Positions 12,704 through 23,255 of a DNA stretch of 64,000 nt are shown piece by piece; the stretch's first letter is position 1, and each line of letters begins with the position of its first letter. Source of the DNA: Dimorphilus gyrociliatus (Eukaryota > Animalia > Annelida); the NCBI GenBank assembly GCA_904063045.1, contig CAJFCJ010000024.1:248001-312000 (forward strand), given 5' to 3'. A program made the position numbers and the translations under genes. Below the pieces are notes generated by a model. It saw only the letters and a program-made list of their open reading frames with translations. It searched no databases and was not told where the DNA came from.

Positions 12704-13546
12704 ATGATAATAATAATAAAAATATTAATAATTAATAACAATAATAACAATAAACAATCAAAAATTTCAAGCGTCATCTGTGATAATAGGAAAATATGTA
12801 GATATTTTTTTTACTACAAATATACATGAATTAAATACAAAATATTGTTTTTTAATCAATTTTTATGTTATTTTAAGGTATGATCAAGTATTATTACATT
12901 GAAAAAATAGCATAAAAAATATCTAATTAGCAACAAAGATAATTTAAAAGGCAAAATGTTTATAAAAGCACAGCGGTCTAAGACACAATAGGATAAATTA
13001 GACAGAGAAGAAAGTATATAAATATGGACATATACACACATACAGTATATATATATATATATATACTGTATATTATATGGGAAAAAGAAAACAAACGAAA
13101 AGCTGTTCCATTATCAACTATTCTACGGGAAAAACTAAAGTGTGACACGATATTTCTCTCGTTTCTCTCTCTCTCTCTCTCTCAATCTTTTTCTCATCTC
13201 TTCTTCTGTCTTTAACTTTTTTGTATAATTCATCTTTTTCTTTTTCTCTCTGTCTGTCTATCGCTCGTTTTTTTTTCTTTTTTTTTTATTCTCTCTTGCT
13301 CCCCATCCATGCTTGTTTTCTCGGGAATTCAAGGAATTCGATAAAAGAATGTTGAATGTCAAGAGAATTAAAGACGAGAAGGATGAAAAATATACTATTT
13401 TTATATTTCGTCTTAGGAATATGTGCATTAATTATAAGTATAGTTATGGTTCATTTTGCAAGAAAAACCTGTTAAACGGAATTTTTAATATGTATAAATG
13501 TTTCTTTTCTATAGCCTACTTCTAATTTAATACATATTTGTAAAGT

Positions 13547-16500
13547 TTACTGATAATTAGTTATATGTTGAAAATCTGCTTTTACAGGTTGAAGCGGAGG
13601 AATATATTCTCCGTTTTGAACGTCGTTAGATGGCGTCCAAGGATCATTCATAACCATTCTAGTTTGATCTTTGTTCGCAATTTCAGGATCGAAGTGTGTG
13701 GGTTGGTGATTTTCTTTCATTTCCTCAGCTCTTTCATTGTCTTTCTTTTCCTTTACGCTATTCCACATACCATAACCAAAATAGATAGCAACACCTATAA
13801 ATCAATTAGCTTAATTACTATCTTTAAATGAATATAATAAACCTTTTTATTTATATTGTTTATACTCAATAAAGACATTTTGTAAAGATATTCTTCTCTA
13901 ACATTGAGAGAAAACTCATTAAAGTTTTATTGCACAATGTGTATAGTTAATCAATTTTTACTCTACTTTCAAATGTTATATATAGTTCATTAAACATAAA
14001 AATAGTCTTTTCTATAGACTAATTCCCCTAGTATTCTGAAGAGGAAGTTATCTTTTTATTTTCCTCAGAACAGCGGTAAAATATATATAAAAAAGAACAG
14101 CATTGACAAACAACCAGTTATTGATATGATCGATATGTCTGATAGCATTAATTAAATGTTATTTTATTACTTTCGGTTATAAAATTGGTTTTTATGATTG
14201 TTTTATTGTTTACTTACCAATTACTAGCCAAACACCCAATCTAGCCCAAGTTAAGGGGGGTAGTTTTAGCATTAGATATATATTAAAGAACATAGCTGCC
14301 GCAGGAAGAATAGGGACCATAGGAGCCATAAAATCTAATTTTCTCCTATTTGAAAAAAAAAACGGTATTACCTTTCTCAATTAGACGCTTTTGTAAATAA
14401 ATTGGAGTTTCATGACCCCGTTATACTCACTTGTTTTGTGGTTGTTTCATTATAAGAACCAGAAAGATAATCATTGCAAAAATAAATATAATTAAAAGAA
14501 TAACTAACATAGCCTGGCCGGATGCTAAACCGTCTGCCCCTAAGACAATTAGTAAGCACGCTGAAAACTGTAAAGTTTAATTAGCAATTAATGAAAATCA
14601 TATAGATAAATAATGAAAAGTTATTATTAAAGCTCTCGCAATTAATTACCAACCTGTACAACACTTAAACAGCCGACGAGAAATATAACAGTCCTAGCTG
14701 TTTTTTCTGTAGCGACTGTTTCGTCGTCAGGAAAGCCAAACTGTAATAAAACATTCTTCGTTTTAGTCTCAAACCACACGACTCCATTCTGTAATTTTTC
14801 AGTGTCGAATGGTAACTTTTCTAAAATTGCTCCGTATGATTTGGGGGGCTCGATTTCGTCCAATAATCTTGAAGGTTGTTCTATCTCCGATGAAGCGTCA
14901 CTAGCCGGCGTCACTGGCGGCGTCACTTCTCTAATTGGATCCAATCTCTTGATGACAGTCTTCGTCTTCTCCAGATCGTGAGCGTCCGGCTGATAGCGCA
15001 GAATTAATACAGAAACTGAAACTAGAGTGTAGGCAAGCAATGTCCCTATGGACATCATTTCCACCAACACTTGTAGGCCTACCAATAAACTTAAAAGAGA
15101 AGCTATAAATCCAGTTATTACAGTTGCCACCAAAGGTGTTCCAGTGTTTTTATTAACGACCGACAAGAAATTAAATAATAAACCATCACGAGCCATAGCA
15201 TATATGACCCTAGGCATTGGAAACATCGAGCCTAGGAGAGAGACTGTCAAAGCCGCTATTGAACCAACAGCAACCACGTACTTTATACCGGGTGGAGCTC
15301 CTATCTGGTCCCAGACATCCATCAGGGCAGAATCGGTGTGAATTTCGTTATAAGGCAGCATCAAGGTTAAAACTATGCTAATAGCCGCGTAAACAGTTAA
15401 GCTGATGAGTAAGCTAGATATAATAGCTTTTGGGATGCTTTTACTAGCTTCTTTTGCTTCTTCTCCAGTTGTTGCAATGATATCGAAGCCGATGAACGCA
15501 TAAAAGCAGGTAGCAGCACCGGAAAATACACCAGATGGTCCATAAGGGCTAAAATTACTCCAATTCTGCTTGTCAGCATGAACTAAACCTATGGGGCGAG
15601 ATTCCGAAACTTCCTATTATTCTTTCAATCATATACAGGTAGCTTGTTTCACTCTTCCTAATATGAGAATAGACTCCCTTTTACTAGTAGAATAACTAAC
15701 CACCCCTTATATTGTCTTATAAAATGGGAAATAGCTAATTTAATTAATTATTTGATTAACTAATTAACTTTATGCTATAGGAATAGACAATACGATAAAA
15801 CAAATTATAAAATAAAGTCATAAAAAAAGCGGAAAAGTAAGATAATAGGTTTTTTTTATAGACGACGAGAATATTTTCTTACAAAAAAAGTATATCATTA
15901 ATTCCGAATCACGTACTCACCTAGGCGATTAATTTACATCATCTGCTTCATTATAGTATGAATACAGTTTGCTTATTTTCGTAAACTTATCTTTGAGTGA
16001 AAGATCAATTTCTTTAACTTTTTAATTGATAAACTTTTCCTTAAATGATACTCGACTGTTTCTTTTTGCTCGTTAGTTTGAAATTATTGTATTATGCATG
16101 TGCTGTAAATACATCTCTATTCTATAAAAAAATGTGTAGCCTTCTCTTGTATTGTAAACAAAAGGACCCTTTTCATTAATTTATTATTCTTCCTATGCTA
16201 TCTCGAGTTATTTCCTGCAACTTTTCCTGTTGTTGCTTGTAACTTTCTAATTCTTGCTCATTAGCTATATGTAAGAAAAATTGGTTGAGTGAGTAACTAG
16301 AGACAGTGAATGAAGAATCGGTATGGAAAATAAACTAGTTTAAGAAATGGACCGGAATATAGGCGATAGGAAAGACGAACAATGGACGGGGAATAGGAAA
16401 TGATGATAAATATTCTAAACAGCCCTTCTATACAAGAAACAGGGGAAAAACAATGAAATTTTCAAAATAACACATATTTATCTTTCGTCTCTGTTGCGTG

Positions 16501-19500
16501 AAAGGCTACTTTGTTCTTAATCACGAACTCGTCTCTCTGTACAGCTACTACAGTTGCAGAGAAGGTGGCGTTGCTAATGGTAATAGCAAGATAACAGGAG
16601 TTGAAACTACATTGAACAATTAAAGTATAATAGGAATAAATCGGAGTTACGCCCCTGCTATAAAAATTATGACGCAAGATGCCAAATTAATTATGTTTAG
16701 TATGTTGTTGAAAAATAGTGATTTTTTAACACCAGCTGCCATTAAAGTCGTCATAACAATACCGATGGCGAAGCCAAGGAAATCCGGATACGTCTTTCCA
16801 ATTACCGTACCAACGTTAGCCTCCAGACTCTCCGACATAGTGTGATTCCCTAACGAATCGAAGCAAGCCGACAAAGCGGATGCTCCTGCAGCAGTACCAA
16901 TCATATATTCTAGAATCAGATTCCAACCTATTAGGAATGCAACGAATTCCCCAACGGTCACGTAGCTGTACATATAAGCAGAACCGGAAGTCTTTGGTAC
17001 GCGGACGCCGAATTCCCCATAGCAGATGCCTGTAGAACGCCATTTTTTCCGTTTTTATTTATATTAGAATGATGGAATGAGAAAACTTGTCTTATAATTT
17101 ATAGACGTTGACGTGATTTGCATTCGTTCTTGCTTATCTACTGTAATTATATAGCGTGTGAAGTATTTTATAAGGCGAGTAAAAAAATTTATTCGATGCC
17201 AACAATAGCATCACTTTCTTCCTCTCTCTCCTTTCTTTTTTACTCCTCATCTTCCCAGCTCTAATATTTCAATTATATCTTTCCTACAAATATTTAATTT
17301 ACCCATACATACTATTCAAGTTAAGTTCTAAACTATAACGTTCATATATGAATCTTTAGAAAGAGAACCATATTTAGCCTTGCTGTTAAAAGTTAAATAT
17401 TTTTTCATAGGTTTAACTAACGTTTAGTTTGAAAGACAAGAGACAAAGGAAATGATATTCATTCTCTCTTAGCTGTTTTTCCTCCCAGTCAGCTATTCTT
17501 ATATTTTAAGAAAAACGGAAAAAATAGTAGATAGATAAAAATAGACCTATATCTATTTATATACATTTGCCATATAAATCTTAATCCCATACTGTATATA
17601 TTACAAATTCTAATGAACATTTATTCGCTAAAACGAGTATCCTAACCTAATACTAATTGCTTGTAAGCTGTATTGATGTCAACATTAGTAGTTAAAATGT
17701 ATTTAAAAGGTTTCTTTTATCTTAACGACGAAGGGAATAATAGCTGAGACAAAGACTTTATCATTGTAATTGCAATTATTATAAGTTCACATTAATATAT
17801 CGATAGTATATATAAAAACTATATGCTCTAAATATAGTAGAAAAATTGATTAAATATACGTAAAACGACTAGCCTTCTATATCCACATTGATTCTATCGT
17901 TAAAGCGTTGACGATGCTTTTTGTTTCTTTTACGTGGAAAACAGGCAACTAATCCCTAATTTTTAGATGTTTTCTGTCTCTTTGTATTATATATATACTC
18001 TATGTATAAATGTCACATGCATAATATAGACTACAACATATGTTTTCTTTCTTTATATTTTAATTATTTTTCCTTATGCTTGCCTCTAAATCCTCTCTTG
18101 CATCATGCACTATTCTTTTTATATCTTTTACAATATCCTAATAATTTTTCGGGTTTCCTATCTATCTCCTTACTCTCTCTGTCTCTCTCTCTCTCTGTCT
18201 CTCGTCTGTCGCTCTCCATGTTTCTTTATTTCTTTTATTTTTTAGTATACTCTATTTCTTTTAATTTTATTTTTTTTTTTGGATGTTCTATAAATAACTT
18301 GGGATGATTTCAATTACGTGATAAGACTTTTTAACTTATTCAATTTGTAGAAGACAGATGTTAGAGAGCGTTAGATGGCGCTTACAAGGTCGTATTTCTT
18401 TAATTTTAGAAAATTAACTAAAGCATATATATATATATAAATTAGAATTTAAAATTTAGATATACAGTATATAGAGTATATTCATTATTTTAAAAAAAAC
18501 AATTGATTATTTGATTTTACCAGAATTTCTTTTTTTTTCAGTATTCTTTTGTAATTTGTCCAAAATAATACGCAATTACAGACATTATATTGTATTTTAC
18601 AGATCCAATGAAATCGAATAGGCCTACACTCATTCCCTAAAGTAAACTTTTAGAACACGACCGTCTACATAGAAATAATAGAACCTGCAAAATATCTCGT
18701 AAATACATTTTTTGACATGTTTGATATGAATATTTGTAAATTTGCATTCCACAATAGGCCTCTTAAAAAAATAGCTTCGCTTCACTTAGCTGTATATTTG
18801 ATACGCTATTCCTCTCAATCGATGGAATTATATAACCTTATTCTAATGGAAAAGTGCAGTTGGTGCATTATATTAGATGTTCACAGCGTCCGGTGAAATA
18901 GTATACTTGTCCACATTTAAGCTTATTATTAATGCCTCTTTTTTTATAGCTACTTAATTGAAACCTTTCATATATTTTTATCCTTTTTCTTCTTCATTTT
19001 CCAAGTAACGAAAGAAAAAAAACAATACAAAAGTTCTCTTTTTATGTCACCTATATTATTTCTTGTATACAGAATATATACATATATATATATACACGAT
19101 ATACGACCTATAAAATATATACTTCAGAAGGACAAGCTTCATCAAATACAGCAGTAAATTAGTCCATATTGTAGTATGTACTTGTTTCTTTATAAAAATA
19201 TATTTTAAGGGAAAATAGAGAGTAAATAAATTCATCTAAAACAAACAGTTTCGACATCAATTACACCTCCTGCTGTACAAGAGCATCAGGGGAAGAGAGA
19301 AGACAATTTTTTTTTCATTTCGTTTCTCTTATTCTCTTGTTCTCTTTATCTTTTTTTTTAAAAAAACAAATTTGTTACTTTTTATTCACTTTTCAATTTT
19401 TTATAATAATATATCTCTTTTTACTTCAATAATAGCGGTCACGTTGAAACTTTAGCCTTTTATAAATATATGTTTTGTTGAAATGGCATTAACACGCCAT

Positions 19501-21936
19501 TAAGTTTATTATTTTGTCAGAAATAAATGAAATAAACGTAATTTCTATTTATTTATTTTATTCTCCTTTTTCTGACCCTTTTATTCCAGTTTCTTTTCTT
19601 TATAAATTGATAAAATGTTTAATTTTCTTCTTTTGTTTGATAGAGAAACAGATAATATAAAACAGATCAGGAGACATAGAGATATAATAAGGATGGGTAG
19701 ATAAAAAAAATTAGCGATGTGGAAAGAAAGACATAGAGAAGGACACGAAGAGAAAGAGAGAGGGAAGGAACGAAGAAAAGACAGTGAAAGGGAATCAATA
19801 GGAGGATTAATTAGGTAGTTAAGTTATTTTGCAATTTATGGAAAGTGAATAGTTGCCTTTGGGGAAATCTACACGTTATACGTCAAAATGTTTAAGAATA
19901 TGAGAGTTGATTACGCTATATTTTCTTTCATTCTCTCTGTACTAGTTTAGCTTGTTAAGTTACTGGTCACTTCCGTTTCTACTTATCTTTTTCCCTTTGT
20001 CTGTAGTCTTTCTTTTTCTATATATAAATACACAACCTACGATTAACTTATAGGAAAAAATCAATTACGTACATATCAGGTTACACGTATCAGTGAGAAC
20101 GATTGGGGAAACGCTACACTATTAGACGTCTTATTTACACAGCAGATGGAAACTGGAATAATCATTGACAGTTTCCCTGATATAAGCCTATAGAACAATA
20201 CATACCCTCGAGTAATAATATATAATAGATGTGAAAAGTTGCCAATTATAAACAATCACGTTCGAAATAAAAACCCACATACAAGCGTCAATAAGTTATC
20301 AATAAAACGCTTTAGCGACGCCGCACCGTTTCCTCCCTCTCCTCTTTACTATTCGTAACTACGAACGTACAAAAACGTTCGGGTGCGTAAAAAAATTCTT
20401 TTTTATCAATATCATTGCGGACTATATATGCATTGCATCTATTGATTTATACCCTCAATTTTTTTTATGAAAACAATATTCATACATGTTTACGTTCTAT
20501 TATATACTGTAAAAGCGTCTAAAATATCTACTTTCAATAAAATGCTATGGCTAGTAATTACTAATTAGTACGATTAATCGCGGATACGAGGACAAGGATG
20601 ATAGCAAGTTTTCTGTGGACGTAAAAAACTAATCACTGTACAGATCACGTGATTCACTCCAGTTCTCTAGTTCTTGTAAAACACGTACAATATATATTCG
20701 GATGTCAATTGAGGGTTAAATTTGCTATTGACTTAAATAGTCAATAATAACAGAATTATATAATTATAGGCCTTATTTCTGCTAGTATTATTAAAACTTA
20801 GTTATAATAAACATTAAATATCGATAGAAGTTAGATAATAATAGGAAATAGATTGTTGACTTTCATAAATAAAACATTAGCCTATTATAGATACAATTCA
20901 TTCTCTTATATTTTTTCCCTTTCATACTTTTCTCTTTTTATTAATTCGGATCGTTTATTGGATTCTTTTATTTTGGTTCCTTTTTTTTATTAAAAAAAGT
21001 CCAGCATTAATAAAAAAAATAATGTTCAATTAAAGTGGAACCTTTGGAAAGATGATAAGCTCTTTTTCTTTTTTATCTTTTATTTTGTTTGGTTTTTTCC
21101 TTTCTTTCTCTCTTTTTTATTTAGACTAGATTTTATGTGTATTTTTAGTTTTAAAAAAAAACAACTTTTTCTTCCCTTAAAACAATCCCTCTTTTGGTCA
21201 ACTCAAAACTTTTTTCTATCCGTCTCTGCCTCTCTCCATCTCTATCTCTCACTCTGGCTTAATCTATCTATCTATCTATCTATTTATCTATCCTACCCCC
21301 CTCTCAGTTCTCCGCCTTCCTCTTATTCCTTCTTTTCTCTTACTTATTCTTTTCAGTTATTACTATGCTTCTAATAGTATGATTAATGAGAAGAAAGAAA
21401 AACATTGATTTGAAACAATTAATAAATGTCTATTACCCATCTTTTCCCTCCCTCTATATCATTGATTAGTTTTTGTTTTTAGCGTCAAATATAAAAGTCA
21501 TCTCAGTCGATCATCTCCATTATACATAAAGTGCCGGTGACAATTGCAAAAAGACGTCTATATTACAACTAAGCGTCACCTGGTATAGTCATTTAATTTT
21601 TTTTCAACACTTACCCGAAAGGATTGACGCAAAAGCCGCGATGATAAATGAGAAAAGAACAGCAGGTCCCGCAACATTCCTCGCAACAAGACCAGCAACT
21701 ATATAGACACCGGTACCGCAACAACTACCAACTCCCAATGAAATTAGGTCGAGCGTAGTTAGAACCCGGTTCAGTCCGCCGTCCCCATGAGCTGCGTCAG
21801 CATCCTCTGTCTGACTCTGAAAAGTTCTCAAAATTGCCATCTATAACGAAAAGTGACCAACCAAAAACTTTACCTGTATTGTTTTCGTCCTTACGAGACG
21901 TTTTTTAAATCTTCCAATATCCTCGCTCACTTCCAT
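13547..21936 (-). CDS. SLC7A14: Cationic amino-acid transporter, SLC7A14-like (APC family)
   Basis: Spliced protein MEVSEDIGRFKKRLVRTKTIQ|SQTE...LTTLDLISLGVGSCCGTGVY...|GICYGEFGVRVPKTSGSAYMYSYVTVGEFVAFLIGWNLILEYMIGTAAGASALS...GAATCFYAFIGFDIIATTGEEAK...GSMFPMPRVIYAMARDGLLF...EMMSIGTLLAYTLVS closely matches recalled SLC7A14/CAT motifs. Exons 21936-21874, 21816-21615, 17029-~16655, 15588-~14650, then further exons to the stop at 13547. Confidence 0.93.
15593..16655. mobile_element. Putative non-autonomous DNA-transposon (MITE-like) insertion forming an SLC7A14 intron
   Basis: Imperfect terminal inverted repeats GGGGCGTAACTCCGATTTATTCCTATTATACTTT / GGGGCGAGATTCCGAAAC-TTCCTATTATTCTTT (26 of 34 aligned columns identical). 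Flanked by 3-bp GCA and ATA (possible decayed TSD). No transposase ORF. Confidence 0.5.
18368..18382 (+). promoter_or_regulatory. CTCF-like motif in the long SLC7A14 intron
   Basis: GCGTTAGATGGCGCT resembles the CTCF core AG(A/G)TGGCG. Confidence 0.45.
21262..21292. repeat. (CTAT)n tetranucleotide repeat
   Basis: atctatctatctatctatctatttatctatc run in an intron. Confidence 0.8.
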
Positions 21937-21956
21937 CTTACGACCATGTCGTCTGC

Positions 21957-22139
21957 TCAACTAGACGCATCGGTGTCTCCGGAAACGCCATCTGGTAGAC
22001 GCCCCGCCTTATCAAAGCTATATATCGTCTTAATCGATCGACCAAACAATTTCGCCCGTTTTACTTCATATAAATCCTTAGGATTTACGACCAGTGGTGA
22101 TTTATCGCACAAATACGGCGTTCCGCCTGACCTATTCAT
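21957..22139 (-). other. 60-codon upstream ORF in the SLC7A14 5' region
   Basis: ATG-initiated, GC-richer than its flanks, and ends 20 nt before the transporter ATG (21936). A second 6-codon ORF (21947-21927) overlaps the main ATG out of frame. Confidence 0.4.
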
Positions 22140-23255
22140 CTTTCCCTTAGCCTTTTCAATAGTTTTTTACAGTCCAAATATTGTTTCTACTTCTCATTTC
22201 TACTTTTCGTGACAAATTAATTCAATAGATAGTAGGGACGAAAGTGAAACATGCAACAGAAAATATCATAAACATAATTTCACTTTCTCTCTCTCATCTT
22301 GTTCTAAAGGAAAGCGAATTTTTATTCTTATTATCACTTTTATTATTAAGGTCGTCATCATAATCATCTTCTACTTCCTACTTCTCATTCCAAAGAGTCT
22401 TCAATGAGCGTAGGCGTCGTAAAAGAGTCTAATTTCGTGCTGCCCACCAAGTAAGGACGTATAAGGTGGGATAGAAGATATTCAGCCAGGCAATATATAA
22501 TCTTGGTTTAATTACAATATTTATATAATATTGTATTATTAATCCCAGTTAATTATATACCAAAAAGAAGAATAAATTATTCTAAAGTAGTCTATTTTTG
22601 ACTTAGTAGGAAACGATTACAAGCGTTCTATTGATATACAATGTACAAAGGAAAACTACATATGTTTGTACGATCAAATGTTATATTTCGTTTCGTTGAC
22701 AATCGAATCGTTTACTTAGAAATCAAGTGAGTATTATTAAAAAACGTCACAAATTTAAATATTAATATATTAGTATATATTGATATATAGCATATTATAT
22801 AAGTATATACAGTATATACTGTACATATATACAATTGATATATATATACCTTTTTTAATAAATATAATTACACAGTATACTTAATAGTACTGCTTGCAAT
22901 TAAATAATTATATCTATTTTTTATATTAACAATTTCATAATTTTAATAGAAAGACAACAACAATCAGTATCTTCAAAGCGTCTATATGCTTATCTTACAT
23001 AAAACCCACGCCATCAGAGCGGAAGTTGTTGAGATTTAATCGAAATTGTATATTTTTTTGTCAACATAAACTCTAGTATCTTAGTTTAAAAGGAATGTAT
23101 TAGAGGTTATAGGAATATTCAACACACTAGTAAAGACACACGTAATGTCTTTGTAAATTTATATTCAGAATATTCATATAATATATTATCTATATTTTTA
23201 GATTGATACAAATATTTATATATGCTTCATATATATATACAATTACACTTCATTA

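What the first reader, a model, noticed from the sequence alone, without database searches (positions are those of the whole stretch)
15589..16658. SLC7A14 intron bounded by terminal inverted repeats, with no canonical frame-preserving donor: candidate transposon-born intron (introner)
Seen: the intron's two ends are imperfect inverted repeats (26/34 identical), starting GGGGCG and ending CGCCCC, flanked by GCA and ATA. Removing 16654-15589 gives ...IFIAG|LVHADKQNW, colinear with recalled SLC7A14 (IAGLFFINGKYW), but that splice is GG-AG. The nearby GT donor (GC|GTAACT, 16650) is one base out of phase with the AG at 15589. Known: DNA-transposon introners make introns using TSD-derived splice sites, and PIF/Harbinger MITEs have G-rich TIRs with 3-bp TSDs. 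Inference: an old MITE was domesticated as an intron, spliced via a non-canonical GG donor, a GC donor with a 9-aa insertion (acceptor ~15614), or an exonised micro-segment. The arms could also pair in the pre-mRNA and bring both splice sites together.
Basis: partly seen in the sequence, partly recalled or inferred. Interest (0 to 1): 0.78.

Follow-up and report, generated by a model that had tools for sequence, protein, structure and literature searches.

The report
Hairpin-ended GG-AG intron family member
An amino-acid transporter gene of the tiny marine worm Dimorphilus gyrociliatus is split by a 1,066-base intron that keeps the reading frame only if it starts with GG instead of the near-universal GT. 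Its pairing ends carry the same 15-letter signature as at least 17 other introns of this genome, which points to an old family of copied (probably jumping) DNA that became introns.

Summary
In the minus-strand SLC7A14-like transporter gene, the only GT (16650) is one base out of phase. Only G|GG...AG (16655|16654 ... 15589|15588) gives IFIAG|LVHADKQNW, which lines up exactly with orthologues.

- **Ends:** they form a 26/34 inverted repeat (P about 5e-5) and a -36 kcal/mol helix. The gene's four GT-AG introns show no such pairing.
- **Not an assembly error:** an independently sequenced related lineage has the same ...IFIAGA-stop reading.
- **Lineage-specific position:** three paralogues and orthologues of other phyla lack this intron.
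- **New here:** the ends are not unique. At least 18 introns in this genome, all inside coding exons, share the terminal motif GG[G/A]NCGTGATTCAGA at both ends and nothing else. Of the 10 found by motif alone, all 10 keep frame when cut after the first G of the motif and at the first AG past the 3' arm.

This is a long, diverged member of a family with shared ends, most likely old mobile-element insertions kept as hairpin-assisted GG/GA-AG introns. I found no flanking target-site duplication, no shared internal sequence and no RNA read. The PIF/Harbinger guess fails.

The scan had already noted hairpin-ended GG-AG and GA-AG introns elsewhere in this genome. The public model DgyrCDS13168 is wrong at this junction.

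The parts
21615..21840 (-). Coding exon 1 of the cationic amino-acid transporter (SLC7A14-like) gene. It ends G|GTAAGT, phase 1.
   Evidence: ORF list; sequence.
17030..21614 (-). Intron 1, canonical GT-AG, 4,585 nt.
   Evidence: G|GTAAGT ... TTCTACAG|GC, with the frame continuous into ICYGEFGVRVPK.
16655..17029 (-). Exon 2, ending ...IIFIAG. Its last base, G16655, is also base 1 of the 5' arm.
   Evidence: AA_permease_2. The related lineage's ORF P0121 is 97% identical.
15589..16654 (-). The intron: 1,066 nt, starts GG, ends AG, phase 1.
   Evidence: It is the only frame-keeping, colinear cut. Single copy in the genome. MFE and centroid folds close with the terminal helix.
16622..16655 (-). 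5' arm of the terminal inverted repeat. Its first 15 nt, GGGGCGTAACTCCGA, match the family motif at 12/15.
15593..15625 (-). 3' arm of the terminal inverted repeat (reverse complement GGGGCGAGATTCCGA..., 13/15 to the family motif). It is followed by ATAG, the first AG downstream.
16649..16650 (-). GT embedded in the 5' arm (position 6-7 of the motif). It is phase 2, out of frame with the acceptor.
15589..15590 (-). AG acceptor, 4 nt past the 3' arm.
14654..15588 (-). Exon 3 (LVHADKQNW... to ...CLSVVQ), ending CAG|GTTGGT.
   Evidence: The related lineage's ORF P0001 is 92-94% identical.
16515..16529 (-). Internal sense-strand copy of the motif core (AGTTCGTGATTAAGA). Unexplained.
15903..15917 (-). 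Second internal sense-strand copy (AGTACGTGATTCGGA), just after a consensus-like TAG|GTGAGT. Unexplained.
13547..14567 (-). Exons 4-6 (14567-14431, 14345-14218, 13794-13547 including the stop), separated by canonical GT-AG introns of 86, 85 and 423 nt.
   Evidence: Pfam AA_permease_C.

Best explanation
This is a real spliceosomal intron of the D. gyrociliatus SLC7A14-like transporter gene. It is cut at G|GG (16655|16654) and at the first AG after its 3' arm (15589|15588).

Its two ends pair into a long helix. That helix places the odd 5' site at its base, a few bases from the 3' site.

The intron is an unusually long (1,066 nt) and diverged member of a family of at least 18 introns in this genome. 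All 18 interrupt coding exons. All carry the same roughly 15-nt inverted terminal motif, GG[G/A]NCGTGATTCAGA ... TCTGAATCACGN[C/T]CC, and share nothing else.

The most likely history is as follows. An old, non-autonomous, MITE-like element was copied into exons in the dinophilid lineage. The copies that survived were those the spliceosome removes. Selection for that removal then preserved the pairing ends while the interiors, and any copies outside genes, decayed.

- **Shown here:** the anatomy, the pairing, the shared ends, the frame rule, the lineage-specific position, and conservation of the 5' junction in a related lineage.
- **Inferred:** the actual cut sites in RNA, the role of the helix, and the mobile-element origin.
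For: **(1) Frame and colinearity.** Only the GG...AG cut gives IFIAG|LVHADKQNW. Orthologues read AG-L-[FV]-x-x-[DE]-x-x-x-W with no extra residue (P0002, P0004, P0006, P0120, P0122-P0126).

**(2) Not an assembly error.** P0121 is an independent Logan assembly of a related lineage. It is 97% identical over 108 aa and also ends ...IFIAGA-stop. P0001 starts only at MLPYNE, as expected if that lineage's exon 3 is also cut off from exon 2.

**(3) Pairing.**
- Inverted-repeat score P is about 5e-5.
- The duplex of the two ends is -36.4 kcal/mol against -14.0 +/- 3.1 for shuffles, z = -7.2. The gene's four GT-AG introns give z = -1.95 to +1.1.
- The MFE and centroid folds of the whole intron keep the terminal helix.

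**(4) Family.**
- A pattern built from this intron's own arms hits both ends of a GPCR intron on contig C29.
- The consensus pattern then gives further inverted pairs.
- The 10 pairs found by motif alone all interrupt long ORFs. All 10 keep frame with 'cut after motif base 1, then the first AG'. Chance is (1/3)^10 = 1.7e-5.
- With 8 more members the count is 17 of 18.

**(5) Co-variation of the arms.** Within an element the arms pair better than arms swapped between elements. For the 10 unbiased members this is 137/150 paired cells against 130.4 +/- 1.6, reached by 1 of 5,000 permutations. Both-sided changes occur at motif positions 3, 4, 7, 8, 9, 13, 14 and 15. Position 13 is C-G only in this intron.

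**(6) Lineage-specific position.** Three paralogues in the same genome read straight through. Arthropod and other orthologues read through as well, and instead have an intron 19 codons downstream, at GWSG|VF.

**(7) Precedent.** MITE-derived non-canonical introns with inverted-repeat ends are described in Fritillaria borealis, and introners in Micromonas (review PMC11282704; PMC9860276).
Against:
- **No target-site duplication** at the repeat flanks of any member.
- **No internal homology** between members.
- **No transposase ORF** in the three longest members: this intron and the two of about 2 kb.
- **No copy outside a coding exon.**
- The intron's own sequence is **single copy**.
- This intron's arms match the family motif at only 12/15 and 13/15.
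- One member (C6b) fits the motif-embedded GT instead.
- A cut at +4 (CG start, one extra Gly) is also in frame.
- The second set of 8 members was picked partly by the frame rule, so only the first 10 count as a test.
Confidence: 0.7

Rival explanations
1. The hairpin ends evolved in place in a pre-existing or otherwise gained intron, as a splicing aid. The shared 15-nt motif would be a sequence-specific splicing signal, for example for a variant snRNA or a protein, and not a transposon end. No mobile element would be involved.
For: - No target-site duplication, no internal homology, no autonomous partner, and no copies outside exons.
- The first six motif bases plus the exon's CA give CAG|GGRCGT, which matches the U1-binding consensus at 7 of 9 positions (reading; the consensus is from general knowledge).
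- Five of the 13 U1 loci lack the canonical 5' 11-mer and could not be read.
- Earlier scan notes on other introns favoured 'not a transposon scar'.
Against: - Eighteen unrelated introns are very unlikely to arrive independently at the same 15 nt at both ends. Pairing alone does not fix the sequence.
- The position in this gene is new, not old.
- Eight U1 loci, including all the best-scoring ones, have the canonical 5' end.
Confidence: 0.2
2. The intron is spliced canonically from GT16650. The frame would be rescued either by a small internal exon (length 2 mod 3) or by a downstream acceptor (AG at 15558 or 15549) that deletes LVHADKQNWS(NFS).
For: - The GT exists, and the motif-embedded GT appears to be the in-frame site in one member, C6b.
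- Many GT/GC-AG micro-exon combinations are open in frame.
- The acceptor TAATTTTAG|CCC at 15549 looks good.
Against: - Every micro-exon adds at least 2 residues inside a transmembrane segment where orthologues have none.
- The downstream acceptors would delete the conserved L-x-x-x-D-x-x-N-W block, which is still kept in frame.
- GC|GTAACT is a poor donor: C at -1 and C at +5.
- The family-wide phase rule points to the +1 site.
Confidence: 0.08
3. The gene is dead or dying. An insertion broke a once continuous exon, and the message is frameshifted or unspliced.
For: No canonical in-frame splice exists. Three paralogues could cover for a loss. The public model is truncated.
Against: - All six exons are open, with canonical sites at the other four introns.
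- Exons 2 and 3 stay open and 97% and 92-94% identical in a related lineage that has the same junction.
- At least 17 other genes carry the same kind of insert in frame.
Confidence: 0.05
4. Assembly artefact: the true sequence has GGG, which gives a normal phase-1 GT-AG intron and one extra Arg.
For: The assembly is PacBio-based and polished with Illumina reads (PMC7854359). Homopolymer errors do occur in such assemblies.
Against: - An independent assembly of a related lineage keeps the ...GA-stop reading. With GGG the ORF would run on as ...GRNSDLF.
- Both arms have four G/C, and the family motif has GGGR.
- The extra Arg is absent from orthologues.
Confidence: 0.02

Closest known systems
MITE-derived non-canonical introns of the tunicate Fritillaria borealis (Henriet et al. 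2019, as summarised in PMC11282704)
   Same: Species-specific intron positions, non-GT starts, terminal inverted repeats whose arms can pair, removal by the major spliceosome, and many copies in coding genes.
   Different: - There the ends are mostly AG-AC or AG-AT, target-site duplications are seen, and families share internal sequence. Most introns of that genome are of this kind.
- Here the 3' AG is kept and only position +2 is odd (G or A). No target-site duplication or internal homology is seen.
- Here the class is a small minority, in a genome described as conservative.
Introner elements (Micromonas, Aureococcus and others; PMC9860276, PMC11282704)
   Same: Short non-autonomous elements that become introns on insertion and carry splice signals at or next to their ends. 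Many families have inverted-repeat ends. Only 49 of 130 families show target-site duplications, so their absence is not disqualifying.
   Different: Introner copies are near-identical along their whole length and use GT/GC-AG. Here only about 15 nt at each end are shared, and the donor is GG or GA.
Euglenid nonconventional introns (PMC11282704)
   Same: Ends that pair and bring the two junctions together, non-canonical borders, very variable length, and a suspected MITE origin.
   Different: Those lack an AG requirement and a polypyrimidine tract, and are released as circles by an unknown machinery. Here the 'first AG after the 3' arm' rule and the CAG|G exon context point to the ordinary spliceosome.
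Hairpin-ended GG-AG and GA-AG introns already noted by this scan in the same genome (for example ZDHHC21, GPCR, dynein, MSH5, P450)
   Same: Same genome, same G|GR start, same AG end and same terminal helix. The ZDHHC21 intron appears to be my family member on contig C1 (140-nt repeat-bounded element).
   Different: Those notes treat each intron singly and mostly argue against a transposon origin. This one is about 3-9 times longer than most, and the shared terminal motif across introns was not reported.

Membership tests
D. gyrociliatus shared-end GG/GA-AG intron family (defined here) | Both ends carry GG[G/A]NCGTGATTCAGA in inverted orientation | tested here: met
   12/15 (5' arm) and 13/15 (3' arm). 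A pattern built from this intron's own arms retrieved both ends of the C29 GPCR intron.
D. gyrociliatus shared-end GG/GA-AG intron family (defined here) | Interrupts a coding exon, and the frame is kept by cutting after motif base 1 and at the first AG at or after the 3' arm | tested here: met
   offset +1, acceptor +4, 315 codons open downstream.
D. gyrociliatus shared-end GG/GA-AG intron family (defined here) | Precise removal from mRNA at G|GR...AG | not testable with these tools
Introner / MITE-derived intron | Terminal inverted repeats | tested here: met
Introner / MITE-derived intron | Multiple copies in the genome with sequence similarity | tested here: inconclusive
   At least 18 copies share the ends only. 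Interiors are unrelated, and this intron is single copy by BLAST.
Introner / MITE-derived intron | Target-site duplication flanking the element | tested here: not met
   Flanks are GCA and ATA here, and no repeat is seen at any of the 18 members. Only the AG...AG repeat at the junctions is present, and that cannot be told apart from the splice-site consensus.
Introner / MITE-derived intron | Lineage-specific intron position | tested here: met
   Absent from 3 paralogues and from orthologues of other phyla. Present in a close relative.
PIF/Harbinger (Tourist-type) MITE | 3-bp TWA target-site duplication and Tourist-like inverted-repeat consensus | tested here: not met
   No 3-bp duplication at any member. 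The Tourist consensus itself is recalled from memory, not tested against a library.
Canonical U2-type GT-AG (or GC-AG) intron | GT or GC at +1/+2 in a phase that keeps the frame | tested here: not met
   GT16650 is phase 2 against a phase-1 acceptor. The GC options need a 9-aa insert or delete conserved residues.
U12-type (minor) intron | 5' RTATCCTT and a TCCTTAAC branch site near the 3' end | tested here: not met
   Neither motif is at the ends (sequence). The consensus is from general knowledge.
SLC7 cationic amino-acid transporter, SLC7A14-like (the host gene) | AA_permease_2 and AA_permease_C domains, with best hits to 'probable cationic amino acid transporter / SLC7A14' | tested here: met
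   Pfam; named hits.

The most novel reading that the evidence does not exclude
An annelid with an otherwise conservative genome hosts a previously undescribed introner-like element family. Its conserved 15-nt inverted ends would serve both as the former transposition ends and as a structure-plus-sequence splicing signal. That signal would let the major spliceosome cut at G|GG or G|GA, and insertions into exons would become silent introns. This would be the first such case outside tunicates among animals, possibly with a dedicated variant U1.
Probability: 0.4. Interest if true: 0.85.

Novelty: new variant of a known kind. Interest (0 to 1): 0.72.

Why it matters
- **Intron gain in animals.** How new introns arise in animals is a long-standing question with few concrete cases. 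A family of introns with shared ends and a rule-like non-canonical cut gives a directly testable system. One can mutate the arms, restore them with compensatory changes, and follow insertion and loss across dinophilid species.
- **The spliceosome of this worm.** If the reading is right, this worm's spliceosome tolerates G or A at intron position +2 when the ends are clamped.
- **Annotation.** Pipelines that allow only GT/GC-AG mis-model every such gene. Here DgyrCDS13168 loses 51 conserved residues and gains 9 spurious ones. Any gene-content or intron-evolution statistic for this genome inherits that error.

Tried and rejected
1. **Homopolymer error (GGG).** Rejected, because a related lineage has the same ...IFIAGA-stop ORF.
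2. **GC donor plus 9-aa insert, and the public model's splice (16806|16805 ... 15614|15613).** Rejected, because orthologues and the related lineage keep VIGKTYPDFL...IFIAG and have no insert.
3. **Micro-exon.** Many chance solutions exist, but all add at least 2 aa.
4. **U12-type or AT-AC intron.** No matching motifs.
5. **PIF/Harbinger with a 3-bp target-site duplication.** No duplication found.
6. **Whole-intron repeat family.** The intron is single copy, and members share no internal homology.
7. **Transposase inside the long members.** No ORF above 83 aa.
8. **Known RNA in the intron.** No Rfam match in 13000-22500 at E up to 0.1.
9. **Transcript evidence through protein databases.** Exon 2, exon 3, the full-database search and an alignment with the exons as separate rows were all tried. 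They returned only genomic ORFs of a related lineage and the wrong public model.
10. **Variant U1.** Eight of the 13 loci have the canonical 5' end.

**Operators' rules.** The contig is not human (30% GC; D. gyrociliatus by a 100% match of a paralogue to DgyrCDS1517). No joined spliced model was ever sent to a search. Exons were searched one by one, by reference.


Full report
**What is there**

The window has 25-36% G+C and comes from contig C24 of a 77.9-Mb assembly. A paralogue's 523-aa open frame in the same assembly is 100% identical to DgyrCDS1517 of Dimorphilus gyrociliatus. The organism named in an earlier scan note is therefore confirmed, and the contig is not human.

On the minus strand lies a six-exon cationic amino-acid transporter gene. 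Pfam finds AA_permease_2 and AA_permease_C, and the best named hits are 'probable cationic amino acid transporter / SLC7A14'. The exons are:
- exon 1: 21840-21615
- exon 2: 17029-16655
- exon 3: 15588-14654
- exon 4: 14567-14431
- exon 5: 14345-14218
- exon 6: 13794-13547

Four of the five introns are plain GT-AG.

**The odd intron**

Exon 2 reads ...ATA GCA GGG GCG TAA. The only GT before that stop is at 16650, which is phase 2. The acceptor ...CCCCATAG|GT TTA needs phase 1. No GT or GC donor combined with a nearby AG keeps the frame without deleting or inserting residues.

Cutting after G16655 and at AG15589 gives IFIAG|LVHADKQNW. Orthologues from arthropods, a brachiopod, vertebrates and others read [AT]G-L-[FV]-x-x-[DE]-x-x-x-W at this place with no extra residue. 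The colinear cut is therefore G|GG...AG, and the intron is 1,066 nt.

**Is the inverted repeat real?**

Yes.
- The arms 16655-16622 and 15625-15593 match 26/34 with one gap.
- Their local score of 18 compares with 6.96 +/- 1.76 for 20,000 equally spaced 45-mer pairs from the window (P about 5e-5). No shuffle out of 5,000 reaches it.
- As RNA, the two ends form a duplex of -36.4 kcal/mol against -14.0 +/- 3.1 for shuffles (z = -7.2).
- The four GT-AG introns of the same gene give z from -1.95 to +1.1. The coordinates I used for intron 1 in that control were off by 8-9 nt, so that one value is approximate.
- The minimum-energy and centroid folds of the whole 1,086-nt stretch both close with this helix.
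- The helix starts at the last exon base and ends 4 nt before the 3' splice site.

**Not an assembly error, and not ancestral**

A word search with exon 2 found P0121. It is a 108-aa ORF from an independent Logan assembly, 97% identical (three substitutions), and it ends ...IIFIAGA-stop exactly like the ORF here. With GGG instead of GGGG that ORF would run on. The matching exon-3 ORF, P0001 (92-94% identical), begins only at MLPYNE, the first Met of exon 3. That is expected if the related lineage's exon 3 is also separated from exon 2.

Three paralogues in the same genome read straight through this position. Genomic ORF fragments of orthologues in other phyla also read through it, and break 19 codons further on, at GWSG|VF. 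That intron is missing here. The position is therefore specific to this lineage.

**The new result: the ends are shared**

The intron as a whole is single copy. A degenerate pattern covering both of its arms hits only those two arms.

A 15-nt pattern built from its arms, with one mismatch allowed, also hit both ends of another intron on contig C29, in a GPCR gene. Those two hits lie in inverted orientation 346 nt apart. Widening the pattern gave more inverted pairs on C6, C8, C10, C19, C1 (a DHHC palmitoyltransferase), C30, C3 and C12.

These ten pairs were chosen by motif alone. All ten interrupt long open frames that run flush to the repeat. In all ten the frame is kept by cutting after the first G of the motif and at the first AG at or after the 3' arm. 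The chance of that is (1/3)^10 = 1.7e-5.

I then looked at the flanks of 60 more single hits. This added eight members. These were picked partly by that same rule, so they describe the family but do not test it. One of them, C6b, fits the motif-embedded GT instead.

Features of the 18 members:
- The consensus is GG[G/A]NCGTGATTCAGA.
- Thirteen members start G|GG and five start G|GA.
- Lengths run from 118 to 2,068 nt.
- The AG follows the 3' arm by 1-27 nt, most often 2-5 nt.
- Nothing between the ends is alike.
- The three longest members have no ORF over 83 aa.
- No target-site duplication is visible.

**Co-variation**

Arms of one element pair better than arms swapped between elements.
- Ten unbiased members: 137/150 paired cells against 130.4 +/- 1.6, reached by 1 of 5,000 permutations.
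- All 18 members: 242/270 against 219.9 +/- 2.7, reached by 0 of 5,000.

Both-sided changes occur at positions 3, 4, 7, 8, 9, 13, 14 and 15. At position 13 this intron alone has C-G where the others have A-T. That fits selection on pairing. It would also fit inheritance of symmetric ends from different master copies.

**How it most likely works**

Three lines point to the ordinary spliceosome:
- the exon side is usually CAG|;
- the intron starts G-[G/A]-[G/A]-C-G-T, which keeps 7 of 9 positions of the U1-binding consensus (general knowledge);
- the first AG past the 3' arm is used.

I infer that the helix holds the weak 5' site next to the 3' region and so compensates for the missing U at +2.

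The origin is most economically a copying process, that is, a mobile non-autonomous element. Eighteen unrelated introns would not converge on the same 15 nt at both ends.

All recognisable copies are in coding exons, which I estimate (not measured here) to make up about a quarter of the genome. This, together with the decayed interiors, fits an old burst in which only the ends of exon-borne copies stayed under selection. This last step is inference.

**Compared with what is known**

The closest described systems are the MITE-derived non-canonical introns of Fritillaria borealis and introner elements (review PMC11282704; PMC9860276).
- *Shared:* inverted-repeat ends, new positions, many copies in genes.
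- *Different:* the AG is kept here, only position +2 is odd, no target-site duplication, no internal similarity, and a minority class.

Euglenid nonconventional introns share the end-pairing but not the AG rule.

The genome paper does not mention non-canonical splicing. It reports no trans-splicing, and only Mariner and MULE DNA transposons with Mariner-related MITEs (PMC7854359). Library searches for introners in annelids, or for splice sites in Dimorphilus, found nothing relevant.

The scan itself had already noted hairpin-ended GG-AG and GA-AG introns elsewhere in this genome. One of them, ZDHHC21, appears to be my member on C1, and that note says RNA shows exact removal. I did not test that claim. 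None of those notes reports the shared motif.

**What stays open**

- No RNA read for this junction.
- The public model DgyrCDS13168 (P0381, 546 aa) forces a GT-AG (16806|16805 ... 15614|15613). It drops 51 conserved residues, adds EVSESRPIG and lacks exon 1. It is wrong, and it gives no evidence either way.
- A micro-exon or a downstream acceptor cannot be excluded without RNA, but both cost conserved residues.
- Two further sense-strand copies of the motif core lie inside this intron alone. They are unexplained.
- Eight of 13 U1 loci start with the canonical 11-mer. Five weaker loci do not, and could not be read.

Exons were searched separately by reference, and alignment A1 holds them as separate rows.

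Noticed in passing
window 15613-16806 (-), public protein P0381 = DgyrCDS13168: The public gene model forces a GT-AG splice (...EANVGT|EVSESRPIG...). It deletes 51 conserved residues, adds 9 spurious ones, and starts at MYSYV, so it also lacks exon 1 and the start of exon 2.
   Followed up: yes
window about 15532/15531 (-), between ...PYGPSG and VFSGAATC: The intron that orthologues of arthropods, vertebrates and others have here (fragments end GWSG or start Q-VFSGAATC) is absent. Exon 3 is one 935-nt block, and the odd intron lies 57 nt upstream of that old position.
   Followed up: partly
window 16515-16529 and 15903-15917 (-): Two extra sense-strand copies of the family motif core (CGTGATT) lie inside the intron. 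The second sits right after a consensus-like donor TAG|GTGAGT. No other family member has internal copies. They may be nested or relic elements.
   Followed up: partly
G000 C6:578061 region (L061), member C6b: One family member (ends GGAGAGTGATTCAGA) keeps a 233-codon frame only with the GT embedded in the motif (+5), not with G|GA. So the same ends can apparently also serve a canonical splice.
   Followed up: partly
G000 C30:176026-178093 (L029) and C3:about 151.7-153.7 kb (L043): Two family members are about 2 kb long (2,068 and 2,047 nt), AT-rich and without ORFs over 83 aa. Like this intron, they are far longer than the short introns the genome paper reports for this genome.
   Followed up: partly
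G000 U1 loci C3:2401789, C65:4551, C133:19672, C133:34023, C72:27410: Five of 13 U1 snRNA loci (the lower-scoring ones) do not begin with the canonical ATACTTACCTG. They may be pseudogenes or variants.
   Followed up: partly
window 17030-21614 (-): Intron 1 of the same gene is 4.6 kb, very long for this genome, with microsatellite-like (GATA)n and (GA)n stretches. It was not examined for regulatory content.
   Followed up: no
G000 C2:2599565-2601133 (L003:1384-2952): The closest paralogue (DgyrCDS1517) has a single 523-codon open frame covering nearly the whole transporter, so it is almost intron-less.
   Followed up: partly
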